Both the position numbers and the translations under genes were made by a program. From the IMG/VR virus record IMGVR_UViG_3300037110_000087, positions 186,001 to 250,000 of that record: a stretch of DNA of 64,000 nucleotides; one strand, given 5' to 3'. Below, in pieces: positions 2,786-47,968 of the stretch (positions are counted from its first letter, which is position 1; each line of letters starts with the position of its first letter). The notes under the pieces are model-generated. The model did no database searches. It was not told where the DNA came from and was given only the letters and a program-made list of their open reading frames with translations.

Positions 2786-3265
2786 ATGAAGCTCATTCTA
2801 ACAGCAAGAGTCAAAATGGCGACCTCTAAACTTTCTGATGAAGAGAGAAGAATAGCTTTGCAAAGACTCAGTGAATTATCTCCTCATAAAATCATTAACC
2901 GATATAATATGGATACATCTCCGCTCTATTCTGATAAAAGCGATATCGTCAACCCTGAAGACATATTTTCCAACAAGACAGTTTCAGCCTTCCCACGAAC
3001 TGATACCGAATTTTATTCCCATGCGACTGTTTCCGTGGTACATCTGATCTCACTTCAAGATTTTATTCCACGGAAAGGGATTGAGCATTATATTAATGAT
3101 CTCAGGACCGATGAACTTCCTTATGTAGTAGAACTTCCAGATGGACGACTTCTGATTGCTAGTGGGACCACACGATTGGCTGCACAAGTTTTAGCTGGTA
3201 GAAAATCAGTAGAGGTAATGTTGAGTGTTCTCGTCAATGGGAAACAGAAGAAGCCTAAGAGGTAA
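2786..3265 (+). CDS. ParB/Srx-like domain protein with Ala7 leader (MKLILTA)
   Basis: LPYVVELPDGRLLIASGTTRLAA resembles the ParB N-terminal G-x-x-R motif; SD GGAGG before ATG 2786. Confidence 0.55.
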   Translation: MKLILTARVKMATSKLSDEERRIALQRLSELSPHKIINRYNMDTSPLYSDKSDIVNPEDIFSNKTVSAFPRTDTEFYSHATVSVVHLISLQDFIPRKGIEHYINDLRTDELPYVVELPDGRLLIASGTTRLAAQVLAGRKSVEVMLSVLVNGKQKKPKR

Positions 3266-3269
3266 TAGC

Positions 3270-3578
3270 ATGTTGAAGTTCCGGGAGACAGCGTGGCTTC
3301 TGACTCTAAGAGAGTTCTTCAAGCATCTGTCCCCCGAAGATCAGCAGGATATTCTAAGAAAAGCTCCTGCCGATTGTGATGCCCTTGCTAACTTTGGCAT
3401 GGGGAAGATTGACACTGTGATCTTAAAATTGGTAGAGGTAAAAGCTTATGAATTGGAGGTAAAAGCTAAAGGGCAAGAATTGTCCTGCCAGGATAAAATA
3501 GATATATACGAGCAACCGATGATTTGGGGATCATTGGTCCAGGAACTGGCAGAGATAGAGAAGGAAGACACGAACTAG
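3270..3578 (+). CDS. hypothetical protein
   Basis: ORF with SD GAGG, directly after previous gene. Confidence 0.6.
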   Translation: MLKFRETAWLLTLREFFKHLSPEDQQDILRKAPADCDALANFGMGKIDTVILKLVEVKAYELEVKAKGQELSCQDKIDIYEQPMIWGSLVQELAEIEKEDTN

Positions 3579-3645
3579 ATAGTTGTGTCAAGTAGGATCG
3601 CGTTATTAATACAACAACACACATATCCTCGATGTAGGGAGTATA

Positions 3646-4812
3646 ATGTCTGAAAAGCGAAAGAGGGAGCAGAGTAGAGCTTCCAAAGAGTCAGAGACTA
3701 AAGAACCACAAATTTCTTTGTTGTCGGAACGAGCTAAAAAATATGATCCGGATGCAACCGTAGAGGATCTTATAGCGGATTTACGTAATGTACAGGAACG
3801 GTTCCCTGATATTTTCATCAGCAGGAACAAGTACCGCAAAGAGGGTGAGTATAGTGACTCTACCTGGGATTGCCGATTTGGTACCTTCAAAGAGTTCCGG
3901 AGACAGGCTGGCCTGGAGCTACATAGAGGTGCAACCAAGATCGAGATTGATACCGCTCTTCATGCTGCCAGGGATCGTTATCGTGGCTTTTTCGAAATTG
4001 AAGTAGCACCTTACGTAGGAAAATATGAGAAGACAGATAATTCAAAGGGCCTCAAGACAATTCTGATAGGATCAGACTTCCATGATAGAGAGTCTGATCC
4101 CTTCGTGTTATCGGTATTCATTGATACCGCACGTAGAGTTCAACCAGATGTGATCTGCCTTGCGGGTGACATCTTTGACCTCTACGAATTTTCCCGTTTT
4201 GACAAAGACCCAAGGCAAACTGACATTAGGGGCAGGTTTGACTTTGTAAGAGAAGAAATCTTTAGACCCCTCCGTGAAGCATGCCCAAGGGCACAGATTG
4301 ATTTTCTCATGGGCAACCATGATTATCGATTGATTAGACATATGGCGGATCGCACTCCTTACCTACGTTGCCTAATGGATCTGATGGGGATCTCCCTTTC
4401 CCAGGTGTTCGGTCTGGATAAGTTCCAGATCAATCTGGTCACCAGGGCAGATCTTTCTGCTCATACCCCTGCAGAATTCAAGGCAGAAATCAGAAAAAAC
4501 TATAAGGTCTATTATAAATGTTTTGTAGTAGACCACTATGGAGACAATGGATTCCAACTATGTGGGGCCAGTGGTCATACTCATAAACCAAGGCTGACTA
4601 CTAATGTCAATGAACTCATTGGCAATAGCTTCTGGATCACATTGGGTTGCATTTGCAATATCGATCTCGAGTATGTGGAAGGGTTGAACAAATATCAAAA
4701 CGGATTTGCAATGGTTCATATTGATCCGGAGACGAAAGAGTGTATTCCAGAGCCAATCATTTGCACAGCGAATCGTGCACTAGTTGGTGGCAAATTCTAT
4801 TCTAGATTATGA
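3646..4812 (+). CDS. Calcineurin-like metallophosphoesterase with N-terminal helical domain
   Basis: SDFH, AGDIFD, GNHD, GHTH motifs. Confidence 0.8.
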   Translation: MSEKRKREQSRASKESETKEPQISLLSERAKKYDPDATVEDLIADLRNVQERFPDIFISRNKYRKEGEYSDSTWDCRFGTFKEFRRQAGLELHRGATKIEIDTALHAARDRYRGFFEIEVAPYVGKYEKTDNSKGLKTILIGSDFHDRESDPFVLSVFIDTARRVQPDVICLAGDIFDLYEFSRFDKDPRQTDIRGRFDFVREEIFRPLREACPRAQIDFLMGNHDYRLIRHMADRTPYLRCLMDLMGISLSQVFGLDKFQINLVTRADLSAHTPAEFKAEIRKNYKVYYKCFVVDHYGDNGFQLCGASGHTHKPRLTTNVNELIGNSFWITLGCICNIDLEYVEGLNKYQNGFAMVHIDPETKECIPEPIICTANRALVGGKFYSRL

Positions 4813-5712: not shown

Positions 5713-8241
5713 ATGGAAATTGTAGCTGTCTCTGGAAAATTGGCAAGGAAGATTCTGCTAGATGTGAAGGGACTTCTATCTGAGGTCCCTTCACATGTGT
5801 CTATAGACACTCTCGATTATCAAACTCTCTCACATAAGATCAGAGCATTTATCATCTCAGACATCTATGAATATATGGGCACAGTAAAAATCTCCAAGTC
5901 CAGCAAATTTCATATTGGACCGGGTGGTGGCAAGGGTGAGAGCTGGTGTCATTACCAACCAAAATCGGATACCTTTGAATTCTTGACCGATCTCAATTCA
6001 CAAGCAACCAAAGAGGAATTTCTTTCTACATTGTTCCACGAGCTTGTCCATCTTGAGCAGTCTGCTAGGACCGTGAAGACCAATGAAGAGAAGTTCAAAA
6101 ATTTGAAACCGGCTGCAAAGTGGTTTGATGTGGGCGCTTGGCCCCTGGGTATCGGAGATTCTGTTCTGCACAAGACCAATGATCCCTATCTGGAAGATCC
6201 CCATGAGATCGAAGCCTATGCGGTGGAGCTGGCCGGTCTGATTGAAGATAGATACGATAGATCACAGATCAAAGAGCTAATCAACAAAATTTCCACTGAC
6301 CCAGAGAATCTCGATGAGCTGATCTATAGACATTTTGATGATGTAGTTATCAAGTATATCAGGAAAGTGACCGGAAAGTCGAAACAAAGATTTCTGAAGA
6401 TTTTATACCAGTGCTTATCCGAGTCGCTATTCGAGAAGACAGGATCTTCAGAAAATCTTATGAGTTGGTTTGGCGACAGTAAGATCGTGGATGGGGAAGG
6501 GAAACCTCTGAAGCTATATCATGGCAGTCGCTATACTTTTGATGGCAATTCGTTTAAGAAAGGTAAATATGGATATATTTACCTTACTCCAGAATCCTCA
6601 TATGCAGACTCTTATACTGATGATACGCCAGCATATCCACGAGGAGGGGTTTTCCCTCTCTATGTTAAGGCTATAAAGCCACTTGATCTCAGACCACTTT
6701 CTGATACTTATATTCCGTTGGAGAAATTCTTGGAGTTCGTAAACAGCAGGGGTGTTGATACAACACAAACCAACGAAAATGAGTATCAGGCCCTAGACTA
6801 CTTAACATGGAAATCAAAGGAATGTAGTCGTCTTCCAGCATGGTCATGGGTCAAGACGGAGGAGTTCAGGAAGCGGGTGATCGAAGCGGGTTATGATGCT
6901 ATCTGGCAGGTAGAAGGACTTAAGTATGATACACTAGCAGTATTTAGTCCAAAGCAATTGAAATCGGCTCTTGGGAATAATGGTGAATACGCGGAAGACG
7001 AGAACATCATAGCATCCACAAAGATAGCCACTGGGATTAAGCCACCAATCTGGATCAACGAACTTTGGGAATATGTTCGTAGATATACATTCAGACAGAT
7101 CACTGACATCTCACCTAATGTATGGAATGCCAAGGGTGGATATTTTTCGATTCCAGTCTCGAATTTTCTAACGGAGAAGGGTTTTAAGAACTCTGGCATC
7201 AACTTTAAATGGTTTTCGAAAGAGAGAAACCCAGAAGCCAAACAATGTAGCGGACATGCCTGTCGTTATTCTATAGATGGTGCTCCCTCAGGCTATTTCA
7301 TGGTAGTTATTCCTGATGCGGAGATGAACAATATTATAGCGGGTGAAAAAAAATTAGACCCCTATATATGGAACCGTGATGGTAAAGAAATAGTGACGGA
7401 GCGGAAAAGAGATCTTACCTATAGGGAACTGGATAAATATAAGACTGTCTTCGTTCATGAGTTTACGCATATGATGGACGAATCGGTTCATCACAAGAAC
7501 AAAAGATTACGATATCCCACTGATGCTGACTGGGAGAAGGACTGGGAGAAGTCTAATTTTCAACACAAGAAATTTCCCACAGAATGGAGAGCGCATCTCG
7601 GTGAGATCCGACAAGAACTAATTGATTCTAAAGCAGTAGAGGAATGGAATCAGGAATACTATTCTACAGTGATGGAGTTCCTGGACGAGCAATCCCCCAC
7701 TTGGAATAGAATCAAGAAATATCTACCTGCAAAAGGAAGACGTTACATCCTGCAAGCGATTGGTCATGATCTCATTGAAGCTCTTCCTGAAAAAGATAAA
7801 CCTTACAGGCGAAGAACTCTTGAAGAGAACCAACGTCAACGTGACGAATGGAAACGGAGAGAGGAAGCACCTTATCCACCTCGGTTTGAGAGTATCGAGA
7901 GAGTGAGAGCTTTATACGCGAAGGCTAAGCAGGATTTAGGGGAGCGCTCTCCAGAAGCCAAATTCCTTGAGGAGCGGCTTAAAACCTGGGATAAGGATCA
8001 GGAAGTTGAGAGTAGGGGTGAGTATGGCCCCATGCATATAGACAACTTCTCTGAATCCTACCTGGGGAATGAATGGAAGGATCTCGATCCAATGATTAAA
8101 GACTGGCTGAAGAAGGCTAACAAATCTCTCTTCCGAACACCCGCACCATCCGCGTATCCAGGGCATAAGTATGTTTGGAGAGATGAATCTCCTTGGATAC
8201 TTGGATTCGAAGATCCTATCGGAGAACCCTCTAAAGTTTAA
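5713..8241 (+). CDS. Polyvalent protein: zincin metallopeptidase - ADP-ribosyltransferase-like (ART-PolyVal type) - second zincin
   Basis: HELVH...DPHEIEA; WFGDSKIVDGEGKPLKLYHGS...YLT...GYDAI...AVFSPKQLKSA; HEFTH...PTEWRA. Confidence 0.75.
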   Translation: MEIVAVSGKLARKILLDVKGLLSEVPSHVSIDTLDYQTLSHKIRAFIISDIYEYMGTVKISKSSKFHIGPGGGKGESWCHYQPKSDTFEFLTDLNSQATKEEFLSTLFHELVHLEQSARTVKTNEEKFKNLKPAAKWFDVGAWPLGIGDSVLHKTNDPYLEDPHEIEAYAVELAGLIEDRYDRSQIKELINKISTDPENLDELIYRHFDDVVIKYIRKVTGKSKQRFLKILYQCLSESLFEKTGSSENLMSWFGDSKIVDGEGKPLKLYHGSRYTFDGNSFKKGKYGYIYLTPESSYADSYTDDTPAYPRGGVFPLYVKAIKPLDLRPLSDTYIPLEKFLEFVNSRGVDTTQTNENEYQALDYLTWKSKECSRLPAWSWVKTEEFRKRVIEAGYDAIWQVEGLKYDTLAVFSPKQLKSALGNNGEYAEDENIIASTKIATGIKPPIWINELWEYVRRYTFRQITDISPNVWNAKGGYFSIPVSNFLTEKGFKNSGINFKWFSKERNPEAKQCSGHACRYSIDGAPSGYFMVVIPDAEMNNIIAGEKKLDPYIWNRDGKEIVTERKRDLTYRELDKYKTVFVHEFTHMMDESVHHKNKRLRYPTDADWEKDWEKSNFQHKKFPTEWRAHLGEIRQELIDSKAVEEWNQEYYSTVMEFLDEQSPTWNRIKKYLPAKGRRYILQAIGHDLIEALPEKDKPYRRRTLEENQRQRDEWKRREEAPYPPRFESIERVRALYAKAKQDLGERSPEAKFLEERLKTWDKDQEVESRGEYGPMHIDNFSESYLGNEWKDLDPMIKDWLKKANKSLFRTPAPSAYPGHKYVWRDESPWILGFEDPIGEPSKV

Positions 8242-9869: not shown

Positions 9870-9878
9870 TATTCGCCT

Positions 9879-32918: not shown

Positions 32919-34502
32919 TTATTTTCCTTGATTCTTCCTTAGTGTAACAGGATCAGCCGTATAATAATCAATAAATTCCAAACCAAATGAATTACAATAG
33001 GTTGTAGCCATTTCGGTACTGGCGAATCGCATCATTGGTTCAAGCTCACGCCATCTACTCCGTCTAATAGTCATGGCATAATCAAATCCATTATTAGCAA
33101 AGAATCGGGCCGGAACCGCCCGGCAGGTGATCCATTTTACTTCAGTGAGTGCTTCTTCTACCTCTGTCTCTGGCTTCTTTAGGCCAAGTGCAGCTAGAAT
33201 CATCCCTTCAAATTCTGGATCAGCTTTGGGCCTACCATAACTTACCCCTTCTTGAGTGACCTCAGCATCTTCATCAGCCAATGGCCACCAATTAGATATA
33301 ACTTGAATAACGCTTACATGAGTAAACTGATGTTTGAGGAGCAATTCTCTGAAGATCTCCCGCCAGTTGGCTGGATGACCTAGGGATACTATTCTTGAGA
33401 AACGATTAGCAGGTAATTCAGATAAATTTTCAACTGTGAAATTATCACCGAGATATTCATCCACGACTCTCTTCGCATATCCAGGCTCTTGCTCTTTCAA
33501 CATCTCCACTTGCCAGATATCAAGATCGCCACCATGGACATGAGGGAAGGCTTCCCTATAGGGCAAAGTCGAAGTCAAGATCGCCATCAGATATAATTCT
33601 TCTTCGCCCAACTGCTGCAGCCAGCTGGAAAGTGACTTACCCGCGAATTCGGTGATTTCATAGAACATCATCGCCATGACACCGAGTTTGTCAGTATAAG
33701 CGAAATATCTATCCAATTTGACTGTTGACGGTGTAGCGAACTCGTCCAGGAAAAAATTAATATGTTCCTTGTTTAGTAGTTCCTCCATGATTTCTTTTAG
33801 ACCTTCAGCAGAATGCCCACTACCTGAAGAAGACATCATTACGCCTATTGGGGGTAATAACTGTCCAAGGCGATGATCATCACACCATCTAGTCAGGGTA
33901 TCCGCTCCTCCAAAGAATTCCTCATCTGTCACATCTTTCAATTGGCCTGTTGGCGCATGAAATTGAGCATAATTCCTACCATTCTTGCGGATCACATAAA
34001 GAGGACCCTGTTCCAGAAGCCCCGGAGCGTGTTCCTCTTGGGTCGTACACCAATTAGTCCCTGAGCCTAAGGCTCTCGCTGCTGGGAAAGTTGTGGCCTT
34101 ATAGACCGTCCAAATACCTTCCTCAAGCACGATCTCAGATCCTTCTGCCACATCCTGTTTAATTTTGTCTCGGACTTCCTGTTTCTTACTTGGGCCAAGC
34201 AGACCTTGATATCCCTGGAGCAAAGTGAATAGTTTCCCAGGTGTGTAGTCAAGAATATTCTTGGAATCAATGAATAAGGGCTTGTTCTTGACTGTATCAA
34301 AGTCCTTCAGTTGCTGCTTGATTTTATCGAAGTCAGACTCCAATATACGCCCAGCGGCGAATTCTCTGCACAACCACGCGATGTAGCTTGATTGCGGATT
34401 GTCAAGAGCAATGAGCTTGTCCATAGTCTCTAGATCAAGGTCGAACTTCTTCATAAAGAAATCCTTCTTGGGTTGGTTAATGGCGAAATACAGAGTTATC
34501 AT
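32919..34502 (-). CDS. GTxWCT-domain paralogue 4 (leader MITLYFA)
   Basis: shared N-terminal module YxxWLC...FDxxKxKPxFxDSKNI...GSGTNWCT. Confidence 0.8.
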   Translation of the reverse strand: MITLYFAINQPKKDFFMKKFDLDLETMDKLIALDNPQSSYIAWLCREFAAGRILESDFDKIKQQLKDFDTVKNKPLFIDSKNILDYTPGKLFTLLQGYQGLLGPSKKQEVRDKIKQDVAEGSEIVLEEGIWTVYKATTFPAARALGSGTNWCTTQEEHAPGLLEQGPLYVIRKNGRNYAQFHAPTGQLKDVTDEEFFGGADTLTRWCDDHRLGQLLPPIGVMMSSSGSGHSAEGLKEIMEELLNKEHINFFLDEFATPSTVKLDRYFAYTDKLGVMAMMFYEITEFAGKSLSSWLQQLGEEELYLMAILTSTLPYREAFPHVHGGDLDIWQVEMLKEQEPGYAKRVVDEYLGDNFTVENLSELPANRFSRIVSLGHPANWREIFRELLLKHQFTHVSVIQVISNWWPLADEDAEVTQEGVSYGRPKADPEFEGMILAALGLKKPETEVEEALTEVKWITCRAVPARFFANNGFDYAMTIRRSRWRELEPMMRFASTEMATTYCNSFGLEFIDYYTADPVTLRKNQGK

Positions 34503-34509: not shown

Positions 34510-35877
34510 CTAATTATAGTCGCACCAATCAGTCATTACCTGGGCTTTGATGGGATCAACCACCCCTAGAGTTCGTAACTGTTCGTTTCTGAGCCACTCC
34601 GGATTGGATTCCATCGCTTCCATTTCTTCCAGGCTCCAACCTTCCTTGGGATCGACCTTGGTTGACTTTGGAGGAATATCGTCCTCTCTGACTACTATGC
34701 CCAGATATTCTAAGCAAGTTGCAAAATCCTCGTTGACGGATTCTATCTCGTCTGCCTTGGCAACCCAATCATTAACATAATTAACAGCGAACTTGGTAAG
34801 AGGATCGACCCTTTCCGGATTGGCCTCCATATCTACTTCCCGTTCCTCCGGAATACGAACGTAATATTTTACTGCTGTCATAGGGTCGGAGTGAATGAAG
34901 TTCAGAAGTCGAGTCAGCTGGCGTCCCGGTTTTCCTACAAAGACGGCCATTAATTCAAGGGCTGCTTCACTATCATGAGTTTCCTCGATTCTGTCTATGA
35001 GTTTATCAAAGATTTTCTTATTGAATTCCAGTCTGCCAAAAGTGGATTCATCTTGTTCCCAATCCAAATATTCCTGGTAGTAATCGAGGATCATCAAAGG
35101 ATTTTTTGGCAGAAGGCGTTGTACTCGCTCCATGAAGACCCATTGATCATCGTCGGAGTCGAAATAATCCACCTGCCCGATGTCGATAGGGAGCTTTTCT
35201 ATCCGCTTGAGGATTTTCAGATAGCCCAAACCCGAAGAATCTGGAGCAATGAACATGAATTTGATATCACCTGCTGACTCGTCGGCTGGGTTCATATATT
35301 GCATTTCTTTGCCCAAATGAAACTGGTATATTGGCTTCCCTTCGTATGCCTCTGCATCGGGGCCACCATACGCGATATAAACGGGTCCCTGCGCCAAGTA
35401 TTCTGTGGCGAAAGACCGCTGAGTGGTGCACCAGTGGGTTCCAGATCCCATGGTTACAACATCCTCGGGTCTGATGCATTTATACCAAGTGATTTCTCTA
35501 TCTTGATAAATAATTGTGGCTTGAGTCTTTTTCTCTCTCTTCTGCTGTTCGGTTGGTTTGCTGATCTCTGACTCTTTGTAAGTATCCAGGACTTTGTAGA
35601 GATCGTTAATTTTCTTGTATGAATCGATGTTTTTAGAGTCTTTGAACAACGGTTTATTTTTGATTTTATCAAATTTGGCGAGACTGTCCCTGATGATCTT
35701 GGTATCCTGAGGCAATCGTATGAAATCGACCTGACGACAAAGATAATCAAGGTAGGAACTATTAGGAGTGGAATCACATGCATCGAGAAGATCCACTAGC
35801 TTGGGATCCAGTTGGTATTTATTAATAACGAATTCCTTCTTATCCGGATTGGCAACGGCGAAATGTAATGTGATCAT
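34510..35877 (-). CDS. GTxWCT-domain paralogue 3 (leader MITLHFA)
   Basis: DSTPNSSYLDYLC, RLPQDT, TEQQKREKK, GSGTHWCT. Confidence 0.8.
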   Translation of the reverse strand: MITLHFAVANPDKKEFVINKYQLDPKLVDLLDACDSTPNSSYLDYLCRQVDFIRLPQDTKIIRDSLAKFDKIKNKPLFKDSKNIDSYKKINDLYKVLDTYKESEISKPTEQQKREKKTQATIIYQDREITWYKCIRPEDVVTMGSGTHWCTTQRSFATEYLAQGPVYIAYGGPDAEAYEGKPIYQFHLGKEMQYMNPADESAGDIKFMFIAPDSSGLGYLKILKRIEKLPIDIGQVDYFDSDDDQWVFMERVQRLLPKNPLMILDYYQEYLDWEQDESTFGRLEFNKKIFDKLIDRIEETHDSEAALELMAVFVGKPGRQLTRLLNFIHSDPMTAVKYYVRIPEEREVDMEANPERVDPLTKFAVNYVNDWVAKADEIESVNEDFATCLEYLGIVVREDDIPPKSTKVDPKEGWSLEEMEAMESNPEWLRNEQLRTLGVVDPIKAQVMTDWCDYN

Positions 35878-37163
35878 TATTGTCCCATCCTTCTGAAAGC
35901 TGATGAAGCCATCTCAGGATTCAGGATAAGCCCATCTGGAGCCTCTCCAAAATCCATGAAACAGCAGCAGCAATAAAAATCATCGTCATAAGGCCAATCA
36001 TGCACGGCCATGCTCTCGTATTTCTTTGTGTACTCGTTAATTATCCCAGCAGCTGCTTCTCGGAGACGTTTAATGGATTCTTTTGGTATATCGTCTTCGT
36101 CAGACTCGCTCCGTATGTAATATCTAATAGAGGCCATGTCGTCAGATTTTATCAGAGCGTAGAGTCTGGTATACTGAGCGTCATCGAATTCCATGTGTGG
36201 ACCATGGAAAGTCAGCAGTTCCACGGCTTCATCTGTATTGTTGGTTTCCTCGATTTTACGGAGTAGCATTTCTGGCATACCATCAAGAAGCGTGTCAGGT
36301 ATACTGTCAAGAAAATCTTCTAATTCTTCAATCCCGCCAAGCTGAACACATTCCCAGAAGACCGAAATCATCAAGGGATTCTGAGGTAGTAGATTATAAA
36401 TCCCCTCCCATTGTTCAACCGTGGGATCAAGGGATTCACCCTGTTTATAATAGGTTCCATCAGAAGGAAGGAGCATTGATAAATTCTCTGCCTTCATAAG
36501 CAGGCCAACTGGCTGCCTGAATGAATGAACTAAATCGGCCATCATCAACCTGATACCACGGGCTAGTGGAACATCTTCTGCATTCATGATCTGCAGATAT
36601 TTGCCCAAATGCAACTGGATCGTTGGCTTACCGGCTTTATTTAGATAGCAAATGTAAATAGGATTCTCTTTGAGATATTGATTGGCGACCTTCTTGTTTG
36701 GGACGGTACACCATTTTGTCCCAGATCCCATGACAGCAGCTTGTTCTGGTGTCTCGATCTTGTACCAAGTCATGATCGAATCTTTATAAACAACCTGAGC
36801 ACCGCACTTCATCTCTCTTTTCTGCTGTTCCGTTGAATCGGCCACTCCAGTTTCTTCGTAGGATTTGAGTGTCTTGTAGAGGTCCCCCAATTTCTTGTAG
36901 TGATAAATATCCTTGGAATCCTTGAACTTCGGTTTTTTCTTGTAAGAATCAAAGAGGGCGAGGGCTTCAAGAATGATCCCGGTGTCCTGGGGCAGACGCA
37001 TGTTCTTCTGCGAATACTGACCGCATAACCAATCTACGAAATCTTTTTTCGGAGTCGGGTCACAAGCATCAATCAGATGCAGATCCCTCTCCGTCAAACT
37101 ATACTTCCCTTTCAGGAATTCTGTTTTCTCCGGTTTGATCACAGCGAAGTGGAGGGTGATCAT
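35877..37163 (-). CDS. GTxWCT-domain paralogue 2 (leader MITLHFA)
   Basis: DPTPKKDFVDWLC, RLPQDT, TEQQKREMK, GSGTKWCT. Confidence 0.8.
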   Translation of the reverse strand: MITLHFAVIKPEKTEFLKGKYSLTERDLHLIDACDPTPKKDFVDWLCGQYSQKNMRLPQDTGIILEALALFDSYKKKPKFKDSKDIYHYKKLGDLYKTLKSYEETGVADSTEQQKREMKCGAQVVYKDSIMTWYKIETPEQAAVMGSGTKWCTVPNKKVANQYLKENPIYICYLNKAGKPTIQLHLGKYLQIMNAEDVPLARGIRLMMADLVHSFRQPVGLLMKAENLSMLLPSDGTYYKQGESLDPTVEQWEGIYNLLPQNPLMISVFWECVQLGGIEELEDFLDSIPDTLLDGMPEMLLRKIEETNNTDEAVELLTFHGPHMEFDDAQYTRLYALIKSDDMASIRYYIRSESDEDDIPKESIKRLREAAAGIINEYTKKYESMAVHDWPYDDDFYCCCCFMDFGEAPDGLILNPEMASSAFRRMGQ

Positions 37164-38858
37164 CTAGACCATTCCTTGGAAGCAAGCATCCGCGAACTCT
37201 GGGTCGTCAAGACCAAATTTAGCTAGCTTTGCCATTTTCTGGTCCTCGTTCATTTCTACATTGAAGAAGGCGGGAAGATCCATGATGTATCCATAAGCAT
37301 AACGATACTCATTATCCCAAGGAGGACCACCATCCTCATTAACTGGAGCCACATTCTGTAAGGCTTTATACTTTTTAGTATAGTCATTGACCGTCTGGAT
37401 GGCGTATTGCTTGATCGGCCATTTCATATCTCGTGGGATTTCCTGATCCAGGTTGATGCTATACAAAAGAGTTGCGTAACAATCAGCATAAATCAATCCC
37501 ATCAATCTTGATTGCTGGTCTTTTGTGAATCTTTCCCAGAGCGATCGTTCACCTTCATTATAATCATCAACTAACAGGTGAACAACACCCTCGTAATCTT
37601 CTCTTTTCTCGTAGTCCGCTACGAGAACCTCGAGTAGTTCGTCAGAAAATCCGCCCACTGGTACTGCCTCTTCTGGGACTTCCCCTCTACCACAAGCGAT
37701 ATTGAATTTACCGACCATATGCAGATTCTGGGGCAACAGATCGTAGATTTTCTTCCATTGGTCTACAGAAGGGTAAGGGACTTCCCCTCTTCGTTTCACC
37801 GCGTATTCTTCAATTGGTTCTAGAAAAATTGGCAAGTGTTCTACATCTTTGAGTATTTCAATGGCTTCCTTGAGTTTGCTATCACTAGTACAGAAAGGTT
37901 CCTTCAGATCAGCCAACATAAAGCAGATTCCTCTCACCGCCAATTCATCGAGAGGGTTCATAATCTGAAGGTGTTTGCCTAGGTGAAGCTGTAGGACCGG
38001 TTTGCCTTCAACATAACAAATATAAATGGGATTCTGCCCGACATACTCATTTGCGGTGCCTAGCTGGGTTGTGCACCATTTTGTACCCGAACCTAAGACG
38101 ACCGCTTGACTGCCAGTAACACATTTGTACCATGTCATTTGTCCATCTTTGTACACTACCTTGGCATTACTCTTCTTTTCTCTTTTCTGCTGTTCGGTGG
38201 AGTCCGTTGTTATCCCGGTATTCTCGTAGGATTCGAGGGCCTTGAATAACTCACCCTTAGTCTTGTATGAATCGAGGTTCTTTGAATGGTTGAACTTTGG
38301 CTTGTCTTTGATCTGATCAAACGAATCTAGAGCATCACGCATGATTTTGGTATCCTGCGGAAGGATTAATTCATCAAATCTACGGCACAACCAATCCAAA
38401 TACCGAGCGTTGGGAGTTGGATCACACTTCTCCAGAAGATCCAGATCCTTCTCTTCTAGGCTATACTTCCTGAGCAAAGCCGCTCTTTTCTCAGGTGTCG
38501 CATCAGCTCTTATCGCAAAAGATAGCTTGACTCTTGACATATACTGAGGAGTGTTGATCCAATCTACGACAGGCGACAGATGAATGTTATGAAGCGGTTC
38601 TCTCTTTTCGTGTTCAACCGTGGGCTTACCATCCAGGTTGAGATAAAATGCCACTTCACCGTTGTAAGAACCAAATGTCAGGCTGGGGTTAATTCCATAA
38701 GACAAGAATAACTTGGCTAGCTCATTCTGCTTGAATTTCAACCTGAGCAGATCATCACCAGTAGCCACGAAGTCTACACCACCTAGATCAGACACTAGTA
38801 CATCACAACCACATTGTATGAAGATGCTCTTGATTATGATGACGAAGTTCGATGGCAT
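37164..38858 (-). CDS. GTxWCT-domain paralogue 1 with extra N-terminal domain (internal VKLSFA motif; possible start 38540)
   Basis: DPTPNARYLDWLC, LPQDT, TEQQKREKK, GSGTKWCT. Confidence 0.8.
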   Translation of the reverse strand: MPSNFVIIIKSIFIQCGCDVLVSDLGGVDFVATGDDLLRLKFKQNELAKLFLSYGINPSLTFGSYNGEVAFYLNLDGKPTVEHEKREPLHNIHLSPVVDWINTPQYMSRVKLSFAIRADATPEKRAALLRKYSLEEKDLDLLEKCDPTPNARYLDWLCRRFDELILPQDTKIMRDALDSFDQIKDKPKFNHSKNLDSYKTKGELFKALESYENTGITTDSTEQQKREKKSNAKVVYKDGQMTWYKCVTGSQAVVLGSGTKWCTTQLGTANEYVGQNPIYICYVEGKPVLQLHLGKHLQIMNPLDELAVRGICFMLADLKEPFCTSDSKLKEAIEILKDVEHLPIFLEPIEEYAVKRRGEVPYPSVDQWKKIYDLLPQNLHMVGKFNIACGRGEVPEEAVPVGGFSDELLEVLVADYEKREDYEGVVHLLVDDYNEGERSLWERFTKDQQSRLMGLIYADCYATLLYSINLDQEIPRDMKWPIKQYAIQTVNDYTKKYKALQNVAPVNEDGGPPWDNEYRYAYGYIMDLPAFFNVEMNEDQKMAKLAKFGLDDPEFADACFQGMV

Positions 38859-38960: not shown

Positions 38961-39278
38961 ATGGTAAAGTTCAATTTTGCAAAGAAAGCCAAAGCCAGTG
39001 TGGATGCCCATGGTGTTGCGGAGTTCTTGAACCAGTTGTTGAGTCTGGATGCCTCTGCTGTCAACAGTCTAGTCAAGAGTCGTGTACCCTGCAACGAGGC
39101 GTTGATGCAGGACCCGTTCGTACAGATCTCGGAAGGGAAAGAATTCGGAGTACTAGGGCTGATCAACGGAATCCTACTCAAAGCAGAAGAATCAAGAATC
39201 GTTGGAATTTGGGAGAACGACAAACTAATTCGCTTCCAAATTCGAGAAGAAGTCAAACAAGAAGACGAGAAGAAATAG
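38961..39278 (+). CDS. hypothetical protein with Ala7 leader (MVKFNFA)
   Basis: SD GAGG; RVPCNEAL, GVLGLINGIL. Confidence 0.7.
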   Translation: MVKFNFAKKAKASVDAHGVAEFLNQLLSLDASAVNSLVKSRVPCNEALMQDPFVQISEGKEFGVLGLINGILLKAEESRIVGIWENDKLIRFQIREEVKQEDEKK

Positions 39279-41531: not shown

Positions 41532-42116
41532 ATGAAACCAAGATTCGCGGTGATCTCTTACCTTCCCTTTTTTAGAGGAAAGACTCCAGAAGATGCTGCT
41601 GAATACATGAACGTTCTCCCTCACGAAATTGGCTCTGCCAGCGGTTGCATCTGGACAATGGAAGAAAAGACTGGTGAGATTACAGCCATTCTCATCCTGA
41701 ACCTCGCTGAAGGATTACATGAGCATCTGCTGGAATGGAGTGAAGGACACGTGGAGGCCCGGTGGAGATTCGGGACTCATGACTTCCCTGATGGTCGATA
41801 TGGATTTCTCCTGGCTCCAAACATCGAACAGTCCATTCTCAGAGCCAAGATCAACATTAGTCTGCAGACCGGTCAGGTGATTCCAGACGATCACACCAGC
41901 GAAGTAGTATTCCGTCCGTTCAGTTTCATCAGCCTCTCGACCTCTCCGGTCTACAATCAAATCAAGGACAAGATCGGCAACAACCTCAAGATCTACTTCC
42001 TGGATCAGGCTGATTTCGATGATCATGGGTTCAGGATTGAAGATCTGTTCCTGATCGGCATAATCGAACGAACGGACATGTTTACCGGCTATCTGGAAGG
42101 TCTGATCGAACCTTAG
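41532..42116 (+). CDS. hypothetical protein
   Basis: ORF with purine-rich SD. Confidence 0.65.
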   Translation: MKPRFAVISYLPFFRGKTPEDAAEYMNVLPHEIGSASGCIWTMEEKTGEITAILILNLAEGLHEHLLEWSEGHVEARWRFGTHDFPDGRYGFLLAPNIEQSILRAKINISLQTGQVIPDDHTSEVVFRPFSFISLSTSPVYNQIKDKIGNNLKIYFLDQADFDDHGFRIEDLFLIGIIERTDMFTGYLEGLIEP

Positions 42117-42700
42117 CGCTTCGACTTTCCCTTGATGCCCATGCCTTTTAAGAAATCGTCGTCGCTCTGAATCAACTTCTTGTGGACCAGGAAGAGATAG
42201 GTGTAAAGCTGGTATGCCTCCATTCCCTGCCACTCCTCTGGAAGCGCGTCAAAACTATTGTCTGGAAGGGTTTCACCATAGGCGTTGCATTCTTCCTGAG
42301 TGAATCCAGCCGCTTCTCTTTTCTTGTCCCATTCCTCAGCTAACTCATCCAGTCCATAAGGATCGGGATATTGTTCAAAATAGTCATATTCATTAAGGAT
42401 TTGAACCTTATAAACTTTTTCAAGTTTAGCTACAATAGATGCAACCCATTCAGGATGAGACATGTTCTGTCCCCAAGCAGAAAAACTACTGACAGTTCCA
42501 TCACTACTGGGATAAGCCCAAAGCCAGCCTTTTCCATTTGTAAGGCCCAAAGCCCCGTTTTCCTCTTTGCCCACCCAAATTCTATGTTTCTCTCTGGTTA
42601 ACTGTCGGAGACTATCGAAGGGGATTTTTCCCTCGTCATCAGGAATCAACATATAGGCAGTGTCTGCCGTTTTAACGAATGCTTTAAGATATAGTTTCAT
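42113..42700 (-). CDS. hypothetical protein with Ala7 leader (MKLYLKAFVKTA)
   Basis: ATG 42700 after GGAG; overlaps end of upstream gene. Confidence 0.65.
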   Translation of the reverse strand: MKLYLKAFVKTADTAYMLIPDDEGKIPFDSLRQLTREKHRIWVGKEENGALGLTNGKGWLWAYPSSDGTVSSFSAWGQNMSHPEWVASIVAKLEKVYKVQILNEYDYFEQYPDPYGLDELAEEWDKKREAAGFTQEECNAYGETLPDNSFDALPEEWQGMEAYQLYTYLFLVHKKLIQSDDDFLKGMGIKGKSKR

Positions 42701-43952
42701 TCTTCTCTCCGACACATTCAGGCCCAAACTTCTCAATGGCTTTTTTGAAATATTCCACCAGGGCCGGTGGGGTGGAGTCTTCTTGATATGATTTGCGTCC
42801 ATCGCTTATCACAGCATTACCAAGAACCAGCATCACACCATTTCGGAACTTCTTTTGATAATACTCACGTTCCATAAGCTGGTCGAACGCCTTGCCATAG
42901 ACTGGATCAATATCGGTCAGCATTGATGAACATCCTGGGTTCTCGCATCCAAACAAATCAGAGTAATCAGAATAGCCGTTCACTATGGGTCTATGATATT
43001 CATGACAGAAGCCACAATAAGCATCGTTGCAGAAACCACTGGTGTACCTGGGTTCGGTGCCATTCAACCACTTGACGAAATGCCAGGGTGCACGGAGACT
43101 ATTGCACCAGACTTGGCTCATACCACAACGACATACATACAAGATGCCATAAGGGTACTGATGGTTCGTATTGATTACTGGCTTCTCATCAGGAAGAAGA
43201 TAGCCATAGCAATGAGCACATCTCATCGAGTGTTCGTTTTTGAATTTGGCTGTCCTTAGAGAGGCATTCCTGGTTTGCAGTGGATGGATTTGCTCAGGGT
43301 AGAAAGCAATCCAGGCTTCTTCTCTATACTGTGCGCTATCATACCCTTCCGCTTTCAGCCCTGCCACTAAATTAATAAAGTTGGGATCACTCGGGCTGAT
43401 GTGAAGAGCACGAAGGTCTGCTGGATTTTCCACGGAAAGTCTTGCGGAGATAATCCTACCATTCGGTTGATCTTTAATTAGATCCCTACAGTAATTAATA
43501 TCTCGGTGGAACATTGCTGGGGTTCGGAAAGTCTCTAATTCTTTTGTAGTGCCATGGTAGACCACATCTGGGACTTTGAGACTTGCATTAATTCTAATCT
43601 GTAAGGGATGAATTTCAGTGACCATCGCTCTTACATTATCAACGTGATTTCTGACTAATGACTCAATCCGGTGTAACCCATCCCAGACATAATAATCATC
43701 TTTGTACTTGACAATCTCAGGCAAGTTGTGAAACTTCGTTACCTGTCTAAGTAATTCTACTTTCTTATCCTCTATCTTAGATTGGACGCTCTTTAACTCT
43801 TGGATGGGCAGGGTCTTCTTATAGGTAACTGAAGAATGATTCTTCAACGCCTTGGCAATTTCTTCCTCCAAACGACGCGAAGCTACCGGGAGAGTTGTTT
43901 CCGTATCCCAGTAAGCTTTTCTTTTTACCCTAGCAATTAAATATAATATCAT
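42684..43952 (-). CDS. Polyvalent protein: ParB-like - ART-like - Cys-rich domain; Ala7 leader (MILYLIA)
   Basis: VWDGLHRI; VVYHGT...LKAEGYDSAQY..EAWIAFYPEQI; multiple CxxC; repeated junction IHPLQxR(I)NASL. Confidence 0.7.
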   Translation of the reverse strand: MILYLIARVKRKAYWDTETTLPVASRRLEEEIAKALKNHSSVTYKKTLPIQELKSVQSKIEDKKVELLRQVTKFHNLPEIVKYKDDYYVWDGLHRIESLVRNHVDNVRAMVTEIHPLQIRINASLKVPDVVYHGTTKELETFRTPAMFHRDINYCRDLIKDQPNGRIISARLSVENPADLRALHISPSDPNFINLVAGLKAEGYDSAQYREEAWIAFYPEQIHPLQTRNASLRTAKFKNEHSMRCAHCYGYLLPDEKPVINTNHQYPYGILYVCRCGMSQVWCNSLRAPWHFVKWLNGTEPRYTSGFCNDAYCGFCHEYHRPIVNGYSDYSDLFGCENPGCSSMLTDIDPVYGKAFDQLMEREYYQKKFRNGVMLVLGNAVISDGRKSYQEDSTPPALVEYFKKAIEKFGPECVGEKNETIS

Positions 43953-43971: not shown

Positions 43972-44430
43972 TCATTTTCTTGTCACCAAATCCCAGACTC
44001 TGATTATCTTGTCGCCTCTCCGTATAGCTGCACAGACTCGATGGCAACCGAACCAGATTTCTCCATCTACCATAACACTTGGATTAGCTGTTGATCCTGG
44101 CAGACGAGAATAATCCTCAATCTTTTGAAAGTCCATTCCACAGAAAACATCAGGATTAGACTTGTTAAAATCCCATACATCAAGGAGGCTGTCGGGATCT
44201 TTAATAGCATCCCAATGAGGAAGATGCTGTTTGGCTAAGAATTCTGGTGTGAGTTCAACGGTTCGCGGAGTCCAATACCTCATGTGAATATTAGCGAATT
44301 CCCAACGATCGCTTAAAGAGCCATCAGGACGCTCCTCTTCGATTTCCCGCTGAAGCACTGGAGGGAATCTACGCATAATTTCCCTCCAGGTAGGAGGCTC
44401 TTCAATTGTGGCTTTCAGCATCAGTCTCAT
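43972..44430 (-). CDS. ParB/Srx-like protein with Ala7 leader (MRLMLKA)
   Basis: PSVMVDGEIWFGCHRVCAA; TG-C-TATAAT immediately upstream. Confidence 0.55.
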   Translation of the reverse strand: MRLMLKATIEEPPTWREIMRRFPPVLQREIEEERPDGSLSDRWEFANIHMRYWTPRTVELTPEFLAKQHLPHWDAIKDPDSLLDVWDFNKSNPDVFCGMDFQKIEDYSRLPGSTANPSVMVDGEIWFGCHRVCAAIRRGDKIIRVWDLVTRK

Positions 44431-44447
44431 GGTTCCATTATAGCATT

Positions 44448-44467
44448 GGACCCCCTTTCGGGGGTCC
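44448..44467 (-). terminator. hairpin after nrdJ
   Basis: GGACCCCC-TTTC-GGGGGTCC. Confidence 0.6.
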
Positions 44468-44482
44468 CTTGTTTTTAGTCAG

Positions 44483-47035: not shown

Positions 47036-47106
47036 GCAAAACTCCTATTAAATTCAGATGCAATGCTCCGAGTTCCTGAATGCATCTTTTGCTATCGTGC
47101 CTAACT

Positions 47107-47117
47107 AGTATAACACC
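47107..47117 (-). promoter_or_regulatory. extended -10 promoter for nrdJ
   Basis: TG-T-TATACT. Confidence 0.45.
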
Positions 47118-47152
47118 CATATCCAAAGACCTGCCTGTGGCATATCTCTTGC

Positions 47153-47968
47153 CTATTTTTGCCTTCGTAGGTATTCTTCTTCTAAATCCCAACAGGGCAT
47201 ACTTCGGCGCGATCTTTCTATGCCCATGACTACCAAAGAGGATTTTTTTCTAATTCCCTCATTATCGGATAAATCTTGATATCTGGTTGTTATTCCTTTG
47301 ATCATTTTCTTTTGATTCGATTCATCCAAGCTGGCAAACAATAAAGAGTATTCTCTATCAACTAAAATGGACTCAATCACCTGTTTTACAGATCTAATTG
47401 GCTCGTTTGTTTCAACAAAAAGCGGATCTACCTTTTCAAAACAAATTTGACCTAAATGGCCTCTTACCTCAGAATCTTGATTAAAATAACTAATCATTTT
47501 ATCAGAGGTTTCTTTATTTTCCGCCTTTTCTTGCCTTTTTACATCCCTTTTACTTTTCGGAGAGTCCACCAGATGAGTCAGTTCGTGGACAATGACCGGC
47601 ATCAACCATTCTTTAATTAGCGAAGGTCTGCCCAAAGAAAAATAAAACATACCAATATGGTCAAGATTAAACCTGAAACTGATAGTTCCATCAGATTTGT
47701 TGGTCATCCCTTCAAAAGGCGAACCACCGGACGTATTTTTTCCCCCTACCAATTCACAGATCAAAGTTATTACTAAGTTCACTAGATCATGTTTGTAATC
47801 CATTAATTCAATTGATAGATCTAGGGTGTTTAACACTCCCGGTTTAGAAATCAAATTGATATTAGGAATACCAGAAACTAACTCTTTGAGAGCACTTAGA
47901 AGTCTGGCTTCCTTTTCGGCATCCAAACCCAAATCAATTGGACGAGTGGCTGTGATTCTTAGCTTCAT
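47153..47968 (-). CDS. Zincin metallopeptidase with Ala7 leader (MKLRITA)
   Basis: IVHELTH...YFNQDSEVRGHLGQI, similar to both zincin domains of 5713-8241. Confidence 0.7.
   Translation of the reverse strand: MKLRITATRPIDLGLDAEKEARLLSALKELVSGIPNINLISKPGVLNTLDLSIELMDYKHDLVNLVITLICELVGGKNTSGGSPFEGMTNKSDGTISFRFNLDHIGMFYFSLGRPSLIKEWLMPVIVHELTHLVDSPKSKRDVKRQEKAENKETSDKMISYFNQDSEVRGHLGQICFEKVDPLFVETNEPIRSVKQVIESILVDREYSLLFASLDESNQKKMIKGITTRYQDLSDNEGIRKKSSLVVMGIERSRRSMPCWDLEEEYLRRQK

What the first reader, a model, noticed from the sequence alone, without database searches (positions are those of the whole stretch)
2786..47968. Shared 7-residue N-terminal leader ending in Ala7 on unrelated effector-like proteins: candidate capsid-targeting/processing signal
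Seen: MKLILTA-RVKMA (2786), MKLHLIA (25983, SET), MITLYFA (34502), MITLHFA (35877, 37163), MVKFNFA-KKAKA (38961), MKLYLKA-FVKTA (42700), MILYLIA-RVKRKA (43952), MRLMLKA (44430) and MKLRITA (47968); weaker MEIVAVSGKLA (5713). Similar strings occur at internal domain borders: RVKLSFA-IRA (~38540), LQIRINA-SLK, QTRNA-SLRTA and NIIA-STKIA. Downstream domains are non-homologous (ParB-like, SET, zincin, ART-like, GTxWCT), and the housekeeping enzymes lack the leader. It is too short to be a Sec signal. Established analogy: T4 internal proteins share a 10-aa capsid-targeting sequence removed by the prohead protease. Inference: an Ala-terminated tag loads a modular arsenal into the head for injection, with polyproteins cut into single domains.
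Basis: partly seen in the sequence, partly recalled or inferred. Interest (0 to 1): 0.85.

Follow-up and report, generated by a model that had tools for sequence, protein, structure and literature searches.

The report
Shared N-terminal address tag, jumbo phage
An uncultured 307-kb peat phage puts the same ten-residue N-terminal peptide (consensus MKLHLKAFVK) on at least 31 proteins from about 20 unrelated families, many encoded beside its capsid genes, so the peptide is most likely an address label that loads an arsenal of effector proteins into the phage head; this has not been shown experimentally.

Summary
The window is bases 186,001-250,000 of a 307-kb jumbo-phage contig from peat. All quoted N-termini exist. 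Walking about 190 kb of the contig gave 31 leader-bearing ORFs in 20 unrelated families. The core motif occurs 21 times at N-termini and 9 times internally, against 0.3 expected; controls gave 0 of 259 ORFs. A DNA pattern for MKLxLxAF[VI]K hit all of IMG/VR 14 times, 5 of them in this contig.

Conservation is at the peptide level and runs to residue 10-11, not to Ala7. The alternating L3/L5/A7/V9 pattern suggests an amphipathic docking strand. The tag is separable: one paralogue lacks it, homologous profiles start after it, and AlphaFold leaves it disordered.

Leader genes sit in tandem between terminase and portal, on both sides of the major capsid gene, and after a ClpP-like maturation protease. 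None lie in 53 kb of replication and nucleotide genes. Cargoes include ART-PolyVal, zincin, SET and PcfJ-like modules.

A capsid-targeting tag like that of T4 is the best reading (about 0.5). Cleavage after Ala7 and general polyprotein processing are unsupported; only one protein has a convincing repeated linker.

The parts
2786..3265 (+). 159-aa protein with class-1 leader MKLILTARVKMA.
   Evidence: hairpin, TATAAT and GGGAGG lie directly upstream of this ATG
25510..25983 (-). 157-aa SET-domain protein with leader MKLHLIAEVDKG. The Pfam SET profile starts at residue 23.
   Evidence: an independent gene call has the same 157-aa product
32919..34502 (-). 527-aa protein, leader MITLYFA followed by a GTxWCT (PcfJ-like) polyvalent-protein domain; paralogue 1.
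34510..35877 (-). 455-aa paralogue 2, leader MITLHFA. AlphaFold leaves residues 1-10 unstructured, and the fold starts at helix 11-21.
35877..37163 (-). 428-aa paralogue 3, leader MITLHFA.
37164..38858 (-). 564-aa ORF (543 aa in the database's gene call) of paralogue 4. The leader-like MSRVKLSFAIRA is internal, at residue 107 (ATG at 38540, no ribosome-binding site), behind an extra N-terminal domain.
38961..39278 (+). 105-aa protein with leader MVKFNFAKKAKA. The homologous PHROG profile (phrog_21281) starts only at residue 14.
42113..42700 (-). 195-aa protein with leader MKLYLKAFVKTA.
42684..43952 (-). 422-aa multidomain protein: leader MILYLIARVKRKA, a DGLHR-containing domain, an ART-PolyVal-like domain and a Cys-rich tail.
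43575..43613 (-). Linker copy 1 in the 422-aa protein: IHPLQIRINASLK, after domain 1.
   Evidence: the peptide is conserved with copy 2 but the codons differ
43254..43289 (-). Linker copy 2 in the 422-aa protein: IHPLQTRNASLR, after the ART domain.
   Evidence: the motif is found nowhere else in about 190 kb
43972..44430 (-). 152-aa protein with leader MRLMLKATIEE. A hairpin and TATAAT box lie immediately upstream.
47153..47968 (-). 271-aa protein with leader MKLRITA and an HExxH zincin motif. It is weakly similar to the zincin regions of the 842-aa polyvalent protein.
5713..8241 (+). 842-aa polyvalent protein (ART-PolyVal and two HExxH zincin regions) WITHOUT the leader. Its N-terminus MEIVAVSGKLA does not fit the motif.
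16969..17985 (-). 338-aa ORF, probably a metallophosphoesterase by its DxH motif (SbcD-like is only my guess). MKLAFIADIHIG matches the regex by coincidence: it looks like the first strand plus DxH motif of that fold. Treated as a false positive.
   Evidence: the DxH motif of the metallophosphoesterase fold is from my own knowledge, and this ORF was not scanned against Pfam

Best explanation
The element is an N-terminal address tag of about ten residues. The consensus is M-K-L-H-L-K-A-F-[V/I]-K, with a shorter variant [K/T]-phi-x-phi-A. A basic or Pro/Thr-rich spacer usually follows, and the cargo domain starts after it.

Inferred mechanism: the alternating L3/L5/A7/V9 face forms an amphipathic beta-strand. 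This strand docks by strand addition onto a component of the assembling prohead, such as a scaffold or core protein, the portal, or a carrier. Tagged proteins are thereby trapped in the head and delivered with the DNA. The tag may or may not be trimmed afterwards by one of the two head-maturation-type proteases.

The cargo set looks like a polyvalent protein taken apart into single genes: ADP-ribosyltransferase, zincin, SET methyltransferase and PcfJ-like modules, plus many small acidic proteins. It is analogous to T4 Alt and the internal proteins, and to the P1 Dar proteins.

Shown: the tag exists, is enriched, is selected at the peptide level, is modular, and its genes lie among head genes. 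Inferred: docking, packaging, ejection and any cleavage.
For: 1. Enrichment and specificity: 21 N-terminal against 9 internal occurrences of the core motif, with 0.3 expected; 0/259 control ORFs. Five of 14 IMG/VR-wide pattern hits fall in this one contig.
2. Peptide-level selection: the Leu, Ala and Lys codons differ among copies.
3. Unrelated cargo: 31 proteins form 20 families after the first 14 residues are removed.
4. Modularity:
- The 737-aa paralogue starts at the domain without the tag.
- phrog_21281 starts at residue 14 of the 105-aa protein.
- The Pfam SET profile starts at residue 23.
- The same C-terminal domain follows the tag directly in a 140-aa protein and after about 95 residues in a 229-aa protein.
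- The AlphaFold model made with a 65-sequence alignment (pLDDT 89.9) leaves residues 1-10 without structure.
5. Position in the genome:
- Three tandem small leader genes lie between the large terminase and the portal.
- Four lie upstream and three downstream of the capsid gene cluster.
- One lies directly after a ClpP-like head maturation protease.
- None lie in contig 235-288 kb, which holds nucleotide-metabolism and replication genes.
6. Cargo type: ART-PolyVal and MPTase-PolyVal hits. The GTxWCT domain recurs inside 1,000-2,500-aa proteins that also carry ART-PolyVal. Its PA5oct homologue is annotated as a structural protein found by ESI-MS/MS.
7. [quoted passage not shown]
8. A relative with 49% portal identity has MKLRVTA on a gene next to its terminase.
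Against: - There are no proteomic, structural or genetic data: the phage is uncultured and has no cultured relatives.
- The major capsid protein and the candidate scaffold proteins lack the tag.
- No conserved cleavage site follows the tag, and the first Glu appears at the distance expected by chance.
- The specificity of both candidate proteases is unknown.
- The PA5oct 'ESI-MS/MS' flag also marks ribonucleotide reductase and thymidylate synthase, so it is weak evidence for virion location.
- Thirty or more different packaged species is a lot, and about 120 kb of the contig was not examined.
- Gene neighbourhood is only correlative.
Confidence: 0.5

Rival explanations
1. The tag is an N-terminal degradation or processing tag. 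It is read by a protease system, either the phage's own ClpP-like enzyme or host ClpXP/ClpAP, and it times the lifetime of these proteins rather than their packaging.
For: A ClpP-family protease (Pfam CLP_protease, 4e-29) is encoded in the genome, directly upstream of a leader-bearing gene. From my memory, not tested here, the tag loosely resembles the ClpX N-terminal recognition class Met-basic-hydrophobic.
Against: - The best PHROG matches of that protease are head-maturation proteases, not ATP-dependent Clp.
- No ClpX or ClpA partner was seen in the roughly 190 kb examined (Pfam lists).
- Degradation does not explain why the leader genes cluster among the terminase, portal and capsid genes.
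Confidence: 0.15
2. The tag addresses proteins to something other than the capsid: a shared chaperone or carrier, the membrane, an export route, or an intracellular phage structure. The genome encodes an actin-like Volactin homologue, for example.
For: The data show only a shared, exposed, amphipathic N-terminal strand on unrelated proteins. An actin-like gene is present at 59973-62018.
Against: - The tag is too short and too polar to be a Sec, Tat or lipoprotein signal. Genuine signal peptides in the same genome look quite different, for example MKRHLLTLLSLVLFFCAVIVGCS.
- No compartment-shell genes were recognised.
- The genomic association is with head genes.
Confidence: 0.15
3. The tag is a Prp/L27-type leader. 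As in staphylococcal phage 80alpha, a short N-terminal leader resembling that of ribosomal protein L27 is removed just before the Ala by a Prp cysteine protease, host or phage encoded.
For: There is a superficial likeness: the published L27 and 80alpha motif is MLxx(D/N)LQ(F/L)F'A(S/H)KK, with the cut before Ala (PMC9405229). Here MVKFNF-AKKAK and MITLHF-AV are comparable.
Against: - The defining LQ and F-F residues and the (S/H)KK after Ala are absent from the consensus MKLHLKAFVK.
- No Prp-like His/Cys motif was found in the six frames of the window.
- No Peptidase_Prp hit appears in the precomputed Pfam lists.
- The capsid protein, which carries the leader in 80alpha, lacks it here.
Confidence: 0.05
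4. There is no special function. The strings are ordinary first beta-strands of alpha/beta folds, or a translation-start preference for MK, picked out by eye.
For: The probable metallophosphoesterase N-terminus MKLAFIADIHIG matches the motif, apparently for fold reasons. Lys at position 2 is common in bacteria and phages generally (my own knowledge).
Against: - The enrichment is extreme and specific to this genome.
- Conservation includes His4, Ala7, Phe8, Val9 and Lys10 across 20 families, some of them small all-helical proteins.
- The high-confidence model leaves the tag outside the fold.
Confidence: 0.03

Closest known systems
Phage T4 capsid targeting sequence (CTS) on internal proteins IPI-III (Mullaney & Black 1996; reviewed in PMC9026906)
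   Same: Both are about ten residues at the extreme N-terminus, begin with MK, and are shared by otherwise unrelated proteins. The T4-type arsenal includes small internal proteins and an ADP-ribosyltransferase (Alt), which has its own terminal propeptides. The tag is separable from the cargo, and the cargo varies between phages.
   Different: - There is no sequence similarity beyond MK.
- The T4 CTS ends in Glu and is removed by gp21 at an (L/I)xE site. Here no Glu or other fixed cleavage motif follows.
- The head genes are not T4-like by family (MCP phrog_2522, protease phrog_18299, plus a ClpP-like enzyme).
- The number of tagged genes (31 or more in two thirds of the genome) is several-fold larger.
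- Function is untested.
[quoted passage not shown]
   Same: An N-terminal signal directs a large enzyme of polyvalent type into the head for delivery into the host, and the loaded proteins counter host defence.
   Different: The P1 signal is longer than 9 and at most 30 residues. It is known on one protein and depends on ordered loading through DarA and Hdf. Here a short common tag sits on many proteins.
Polyvalent proteins of phages and conjugative elements (Pfam ART-PolyVal, MPTase-PolyVal; Iyer et al. 2017, from my own knowledge)
   Same: The same domain repertoire is present: ART-PolyVal, zincin MPTase and the GTxWCT/PcfJ-like domain, which occurs inside 1,000-2,500-aa proteins elsewhere. 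The 842-aa protein at 5713-8241 is a classical example.
   Different: Here most modules are separate genes, each with its own copy of the tag, rather than one giant polypeptide. The classical 842-aa polyvalent protein itself lacks the tag.
Ejection and inner-body proteins of giant phages (phiKZ, SPN3US; PMC7411985, PMC10052503)
   Same: These are jumbo phages that load many different proteins into the head, with paralogous families and processing by a prohead protease.
   Different: From my own knowledge, not checked in those papers here: their propeptides are cut at (S/A/G)-x-E motifs and no common short N-terminal tag has been described. No homology was detected with the proteins here.
Prp-processed L27-like leaders on the capsid and scaffold proteins of phage 80alpha (PMC9405229, PMC5744158)
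   Same: A short N-terminal hydrophobic leader with a conserved Ala is shared by phage head proteins.
   Different: The motif differs: there is no LQ(F/L)F before the Ala and no (S/H)KK after it. It is carried by accessory proteins, not by the capsid or scaffold proteins, and no Prp was found.

Membership tests
T4-type capsid targeting sequence | A short (about 10 aa) N-terminal peptide shared by otherwise unrelated phage proteins | tested here: met
   31 ORFs in 20 families; consensus MKLHLKAFVK
T4-type capsid targeting sequence | The peptide is sufficient to load a heterologous protein into the head | not testable with these tools
   This needs tag-reporter packaging experiments.
T4-type capsid targeting sequence | The peptide is removed by the prohead protease at a consensus site ending in Glu, (L/I)xE | tested here: not met
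   There is no fixed Glu or other conserved residue after position 11. The first Glu lies 8-25 residues in, as expected by chance.
T4-type capsid targeting sequence | A T4-like head module (homologues of gp20, gp21, gp22, gp23) | tested here: inconclusive
   Portal phrog_16240, protease phrog_18299 and MCP phrog_2522 were found. Their relation to T4 gp21 and gp23 was not established: there are no Pfam or PDB sequence hits.
Prp/L27-type leader | The motif MLxx(D/N)LQ(F/L)F'A(S/H)KK | tested here: not met
   The consensus lacks LQ, FF and (S/H)KK (compared with PMC9405229).
Prp/L27-type leader | A Prp cysteine protease is available, from phage or host | tested here: inconclusive
   No His/Cys Prp motif in the window, and no Peptidase_Prp in the precomputed Pfam lists covering about 140 kb. 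The host and the rest of the genome are unknown.
Sec, Tat or lipoprotein signal peptide | A hydrophobic core of about 10 or more residues followed by a signal-peptidase or lipobox site | tested here: not met
   The hydrophobic positions alternate with Lys and His over only 7-9 residues. True signal peptides in the same genome are long and contiguous.
Polyvalent proteins | Several effector domains of the PolyVal set in one polypeptide | tested here: met
   Met for the 842-aa protein: ART-PolyVal at 1e-15 plus weak MPTase-PolyVal. Weak for the 422-aa protein: ART-PolyVal at 4e-4, confirmed by homologues. The other tagged proteins carry a single module.
Polyvalent proteins | Proteolytic release of domains at inter-domain linkers | tested here: inconclusive
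   One repeated linker, IHPLQxRxNASL[KR], occurs twice in the 422-aa protein with divergent codons. It is found nowhere else. There is no evidence of cleavage.
PcfJ-like / GTxWCT domain family | A conserved DPTP...W and GTxWCT core fold | tested here: met
   711 HMMER hits; W149 and C150 are invariant. The model has pLDDT 89.9. BFVD matches include the PA5oct structural protein at 1.6e-9 and PcfJ-like proteins at about 1e-3.

The most novel reading that the evidence does not exclude
This phage lineage runs the largest capsid-loading 'regulon' yet seen. One ten-residue beta-strand tag sends 30-40 or more different single-domain effectors into the head for co-injection. These include ADP-ribosyltransferases, zincins, a SET methyltransferase, PcfJ-like modules and small acidic proteins. 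Together they amount to a polyvalent protein split into individually addressed genes. The tag works by docking, with no obligatory cleavage. If so, the tag is a portable and easily recognised handle. It could be used to predict injected anti-defence proteins in uncultured phages and to load foreign proteins into capsids.
Probability: 0.4. Interest if true: 0.85.

Novelty: new variant of a known kind. Interest (0 to 1): 0.7.

Why it matters
Proteins injected with phage DNA act first in the contest with host defences, but they are very hard to recognise from sequence. So far, targeting signals are known experimentally only for T4 (internal proteins) and P1 (DarB).

A short tag that sequence alone can pick out, marking dozens of unrelated proteins in an uncultured jumbo phage, would have three uses. 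It would give a direct computational read-out of the injected proteome. It would link the scattered 'polyvalent protein' domains to a delivery route. And it would offer a compact handle for packaging heterologous proteins.

It also turns an old question into an ordinary experiment with a defined ten-residue peptide: how do giant phages choose the many proteins they load into their heads?

Tried and rejected
- Nucleotide and protein searches against cultured phages found almost nothing. The exceptions were PA5oct-like hits to the GTxWCT family and weak hits to the 105-aa protein.
- I tried to reach the capsid gene through the PA5oct annotation. It names no capsid gene in the stretch read, and its 'ESI-MS/MS' flag also marks metabolic enzymes. 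Abandoned.
- I tested the 586-aa, 1030-aa, 490-aa, 440-aa and 399-aa ORFs near the proteases as capsid, portal or scaffold candidates. They had no PHROG, Pfam or PDB hits where tested, and the Atlas model of the 586-aa ORF is poor.
- The real portal, terminase and capsid genes were found only by walking the contig and through the pattern hits.
- Prp/L27 idea: the motif does not fit and no Prp was found.
- I looked for a Glu-type cleavage site after the tag. There is none beyond chance.
- I looked for a shared promoter upstream of leader genes. Some have an extended TATAAT box, but there is no common motif.
- An internal KLGLIARVKKG at about 40611 looks, by eye, like the wing of a winged-helix protein, so I treat it as a chance match.
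- AlphaFold of the SET protein from a single sequence gave pLDDT 33 and is uninformative.
- A word-based homologue search for the SET protein found only the protein itself.
- Foldseek of the GTxWCT model against the PDB gave no significant match.
Full report
SOURCE AND CONTEXT

The window is bases 186,001-250,000 of IMGVR_UViG_3300037110_000087, a 307,124-bp viral contig. It comes from a peat metagenome. Megablast and tblastn against cultured phages found essentially no relatives.

Window genes include:
- ribonucleotide reductase, NAD-dependent DNA ligase, RNA ligase and a CCA/polyA polymerase;
- a PurZ-like adenylosuccinate synthetase;
- an actin-like Volactin gene interrupted by an intein;
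- an 842-aa polyvalent protein with ART-PolyVal and zincin regions.

CHECKING THE OBSERVATION

All quoted N-termini are present at the stated coordinates, and so are the internal strings. Independent gene calls in JGI and Logan give the same starts for most of them. For 2786 the public call starts 57 nt upstream at a TTG. However, a G+C-rich hairpin, a TATAAT box and a GGGAGG site lie between that TTG and the ATG, which favours the ATG.

Three of the listed proteins (34502, 35877, 37163) and the neighbouring 37164-38858 gene are paralogues. They therefore count as one family.

EXTENDING BEYOND THE WINDOW

I walked the contig with exact-protein look-ups and locus fetches. I also used loci returned by a pattern scan. 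Together these gave about 190 kb. Many further copies of the leader appeared.

- Three tandem small genes lie between the large terminase (phrog_17415, 3e-107) and the portal (phrog_16240, 1e-98). They begin MKLLLRAFVKK, MKLHLKAFIKV and MKLHLIAYVKK.
- Four tandem genes lie upstream of the capsid cluster. They begin MRLHLKAHITR, MKLHFVAKGKG, MKLHLVANIKQ and MKLTLRAFLKT. The last leads straight into an ART-PolyVal-type sequence.
- Three genes lie just downstream of the major capsid gene (phrog_2522, 2e-57), separated from it only by a homing endonuclease.
- One gene (MGKLRLAFKTVVK, 399 aa) lies directly after a ClpP-family protease. That protease's best PHROG matches are head-maturation proteases.
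- Others are scattered.
- A second head-maturation protease candidate (phrog_18299, 1e-31) lies next to the portal.
- No leader gene was found in contig 235-288 kb, which holds nucleotide-metabolism, repair and replication genes.

STATISTICS

The core [KRQ][LV].[LIF].A occurs 30 times in 60,013 residues of 257 ORFs. Twenty-one of these lie directly behind a start codon, where 0.31 would be expected from the internal rate (P about 4e-31). The regex was derived from the data, so the P value is only indicative.

The same test gave 0/89 ORFs in PA5oct, 0/46 in two relatives and 0/124 in unrelated viral loci.

A test that does not depend on my gene calls used the degenerate DNA pattern for MKLxLxAF[VI]K. 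It matches 14 places in the whole IMG/VR collection. Five are in this single contig, each at the start of a real ORF. The other nine lie mostly in non-coding frames of unrelated contigs.

Codons for Leu, Ala and Lys differ freely among copies. Selection therefore acts on the peptide, not on the DNA or RNA.

ANATOMY OF THE TAG

Twenty-five copies were aligned on the Ala. The counts are K2 19/25, L3 23/25, H4 11/25, L5 20/25, K6 10/25, A7 24/25, F8 7/25, V/I9 17/25, K10 15/25 and K11 9/25.

The conserved element is thus about ten residues, not seven. L3, L5, A7 and V9 form one hydrophobic face of a beta-strand, and the alternate positions are basic. On this reading Ala7 is conserved as a small residue in the middle of a docking face. 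That is a more economical explanation than a scissile bond.

A shorter variant, [K/T]-phi-x-phi-A (MITLHFA, MVKFNFA, MGKLRLA), lacks one residue before the Ala.

One sub-family carries a longer module of about 35 residues. It consists of the tag plus KKYPTI[VT]F[NH]K.N.SGNDKSAV.PLKK, and it is repeated internally in two proteins.

MODULARITY

- After the first 14 residues are removed, the 31 proteins fall into 20 BLAST families.
- A 737-aa paralogue of the GTxWCT family begins at the domain without the tag.
- phrog_21281 aligns from residue 14 of the 105-aa protein.
- The Pfam SET profile aligns from residue 23.
- One C-terminal domain follows the tag directly in a 140-aa protein and after about 95 residues in a 229-aa protein.
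- An AlphaFold model of the 455-aa protein (residues 1-215, 65-sequence alignment) has pLDDT 89.9. It leaves residues 1-10 without secondary structure, with residues 1-5 below pLDDT 50. The fold begins at helix 11-21.

THE GTxWCT FAMILY

An exhaustive HMMER search found 711 relatives. The domain is common at N-termini. It also occurs inside 1,000-2,500-aa proteins that carry ART-PolyVal domains. Its model matches a PA5oct 'structural protein' and, more weakly, PcfJ-like proteins in BFVD, but nothing in the PDB.

In other phages too, the domain is preceded by a short hydrophobic stretch ending in Ala. Examples are MKLQIIARI..., and internally GWFAKSA-RPSEQK. The short variant of the tag is therefore an old feature of this family. 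It may be where the general tag came from, or it may be a related linear motif.

INTERPRETATION

The best explanation is a capsid-targeting tag analogous to the T4 CTS, which is ten residues long and sufficient for packaging of foreign proteins (PMC9026906). It is also analogous to the N-terminal signal of P1 DarB (PMC9024508). The arguments are:
- a genome-specific, peptide-level, modular tag on unrelated effector-like proteins;
- leader genes arranged in tandem among terminase, portal, capsid and maturation-protease genes;
- absence from the replication block;
- cargo domains typical of polyvalent proteins.

Weak additional support comes from the PA5oct homologue annotated as structural by mass spectrometry. 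It is weak because that flag also marks ribonucleotide reductase and thymidylate synthase.

Against this reading, nothing shows packaging or cleavage. The capsid protein (MAVTPKRNPF...) and the likely scaffold proteins lack the tag. No cleavage consensus follows the tag. I put this reading at about 0.5.

RIVALS

- A degradation or processing tag read by a Clp-type protease: 0.15.
- Targeting to some other partner or place: 0.15.
- A Prp/L27-type leader: 0.05. The published motif MLxx(D/N)LQ(F/L)F'A(S/H)KK does not fit, and no Prp was found.
- Chance or ordinary first strands: 0.03. The only example found is the probable metallophosphoesterase N-terminus MKLAFIADIHIG.

THE POLYPROTEIN IDEA

Only the 422-aa protein (42684-43952) gives real support. 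Two unrelated domains are each followed by IHPLQ-x-R-(x)-NASL-[KR]. The two copies differ at most codons, including AGT against TCT for Ser. The motif occurs nowhere else in the sequence examined. It is a selected linear motif, perhaps a cleavage or docking site.

Homologues show that the QI..L part of the second copy is also the normal end of the ART domain.

RVKLSFA at about 38540 is the paralogous domain start behind an extra N-terminal domain, with no ribosome-binding site. NIIA-STKIA occurs only once.

COMPARISON WITH KNOWN SYSTEMS

The tag works like a T4 CTS. It fails the one defining feature that could be tested, a Glu-terminated protease site, and it shares no sequence with the T4 CTS. 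I therefore file it as a new variant of a known kind rather than as a member of that family.

A relative with 49% portal identity carries MKLRVTA on a gene beside its terminase, and a 33% relative shows nothing. The tag therefore seems lineage-specific and fast-evolving.

VERDICT

Interest 0.7.

Noticed in passing
window 49923-51254 (-) and 55780-56103 (-); also 58825-59544 (Thy1): A PurZ-like adenylosuccinate synthetase has its best tblastn hits to phiVC8-type PurZ. A dATP/dGTP pyrophosphohydrolase-family gene (PF04447) lies nearby. The pair suggests a genome with 2-aminoadenine (Z) in place of adenine.
   Followed up: no
window 59973-62018 (-): An actin-like Volactin homologue (Pfam 2e-70) is interrupted by an intein carrying a LAGLIDADG endonuclease. 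An actin-family cytoskeletal gene in a jumbo phage is unusual.
   Followed up: no
window 43254-43289 and 43575-43613 (-): A 12-13-residue linker, IHPLQxRxNASL[KR], is repeated after two unrelated domains of one protein. The two copies use different codons throughout, so it is a selected linear motif of unknown role.
   Followed up: partly
L025:3009-4943, L033:13098-13610 (outside the window): A longer N-terminal module of about 35 aa (tag plus KKYPTI[VT]F[NH]K.N.SGNDKSAV.PLKK) is shared by three proteins. It is repeated internally in two of them.
   Followed up: partly
L015:2664-3371 and L009:31-714 (contig about 147.5 kb and 169 kb): There are two different candidate head-maturation proteases in one genome. 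One lies next to the portal (phrog_18299, no Pfam hit). The other is ClpP-family, 20 kb away.
   Followed up: partly
L014:16234-19694 (contig 283.6-287.1 kb): Four paralogous genes share a different conserved N-terminus, M[KR]IR.GFVSNSSSSSF. This is a second family-specific N-terminal signature, of unknown meaning.
   Followed up: no
window 2735-2785 and 44431-44475: A G+C-rich hairpin is followed by a TATAAT box immediately upstream of the start codon. At 44430 the box ends 6 nt before the ATG, which would give a nearly leaderless mRNA. Extended GGTTATAAT boxes also precede several other leader genes.
   Followed up: partly
window 40390-40800 (-) and 39314-40333 (-): This is a patch of atypical composition: GC 0.63 and GC3 0.82, against about 0.45 for the window. 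It appears to encode a winged-helix-like protein (judged by eye) next to a Pro/Ala-rich 339-aa protein, and may be a recent acquisition.
   Followed up: no
window 8775-9869, 21122-22639, 53183-53914; L005:2839-4017: There is a set of RNA-repair and tRNA-related genes: two RNA ligases, a CCA-adding/polyA polymerase and a Thg1-like enzyme. NAD-salvage genes (NAD kinase, NAMPT) lie just outside the window.
   Followed up: no
L008:8788-10940 (contig about 272-274 kb): Secreted and lipoprotein genes have signal peptides ending ...LFA-Q and ...LTA-Q. Gln at +1 recalls, from my memory, the Bacteroidota 'Q-rule', a possible clue to the host. The peat source and a weak hit to an Acidobacteria jumbo phage point elsewhere.
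   Followed up: no
L033:11199-12584, L010:9508-9981, window 53917-54690 and others: There are many homing endonuclease genes (HNH, LAGLIDADG). One is inserted between the capsid gene and the leader genes, and one lies just upstream of the ClpP-like protease.
   Followed up: no
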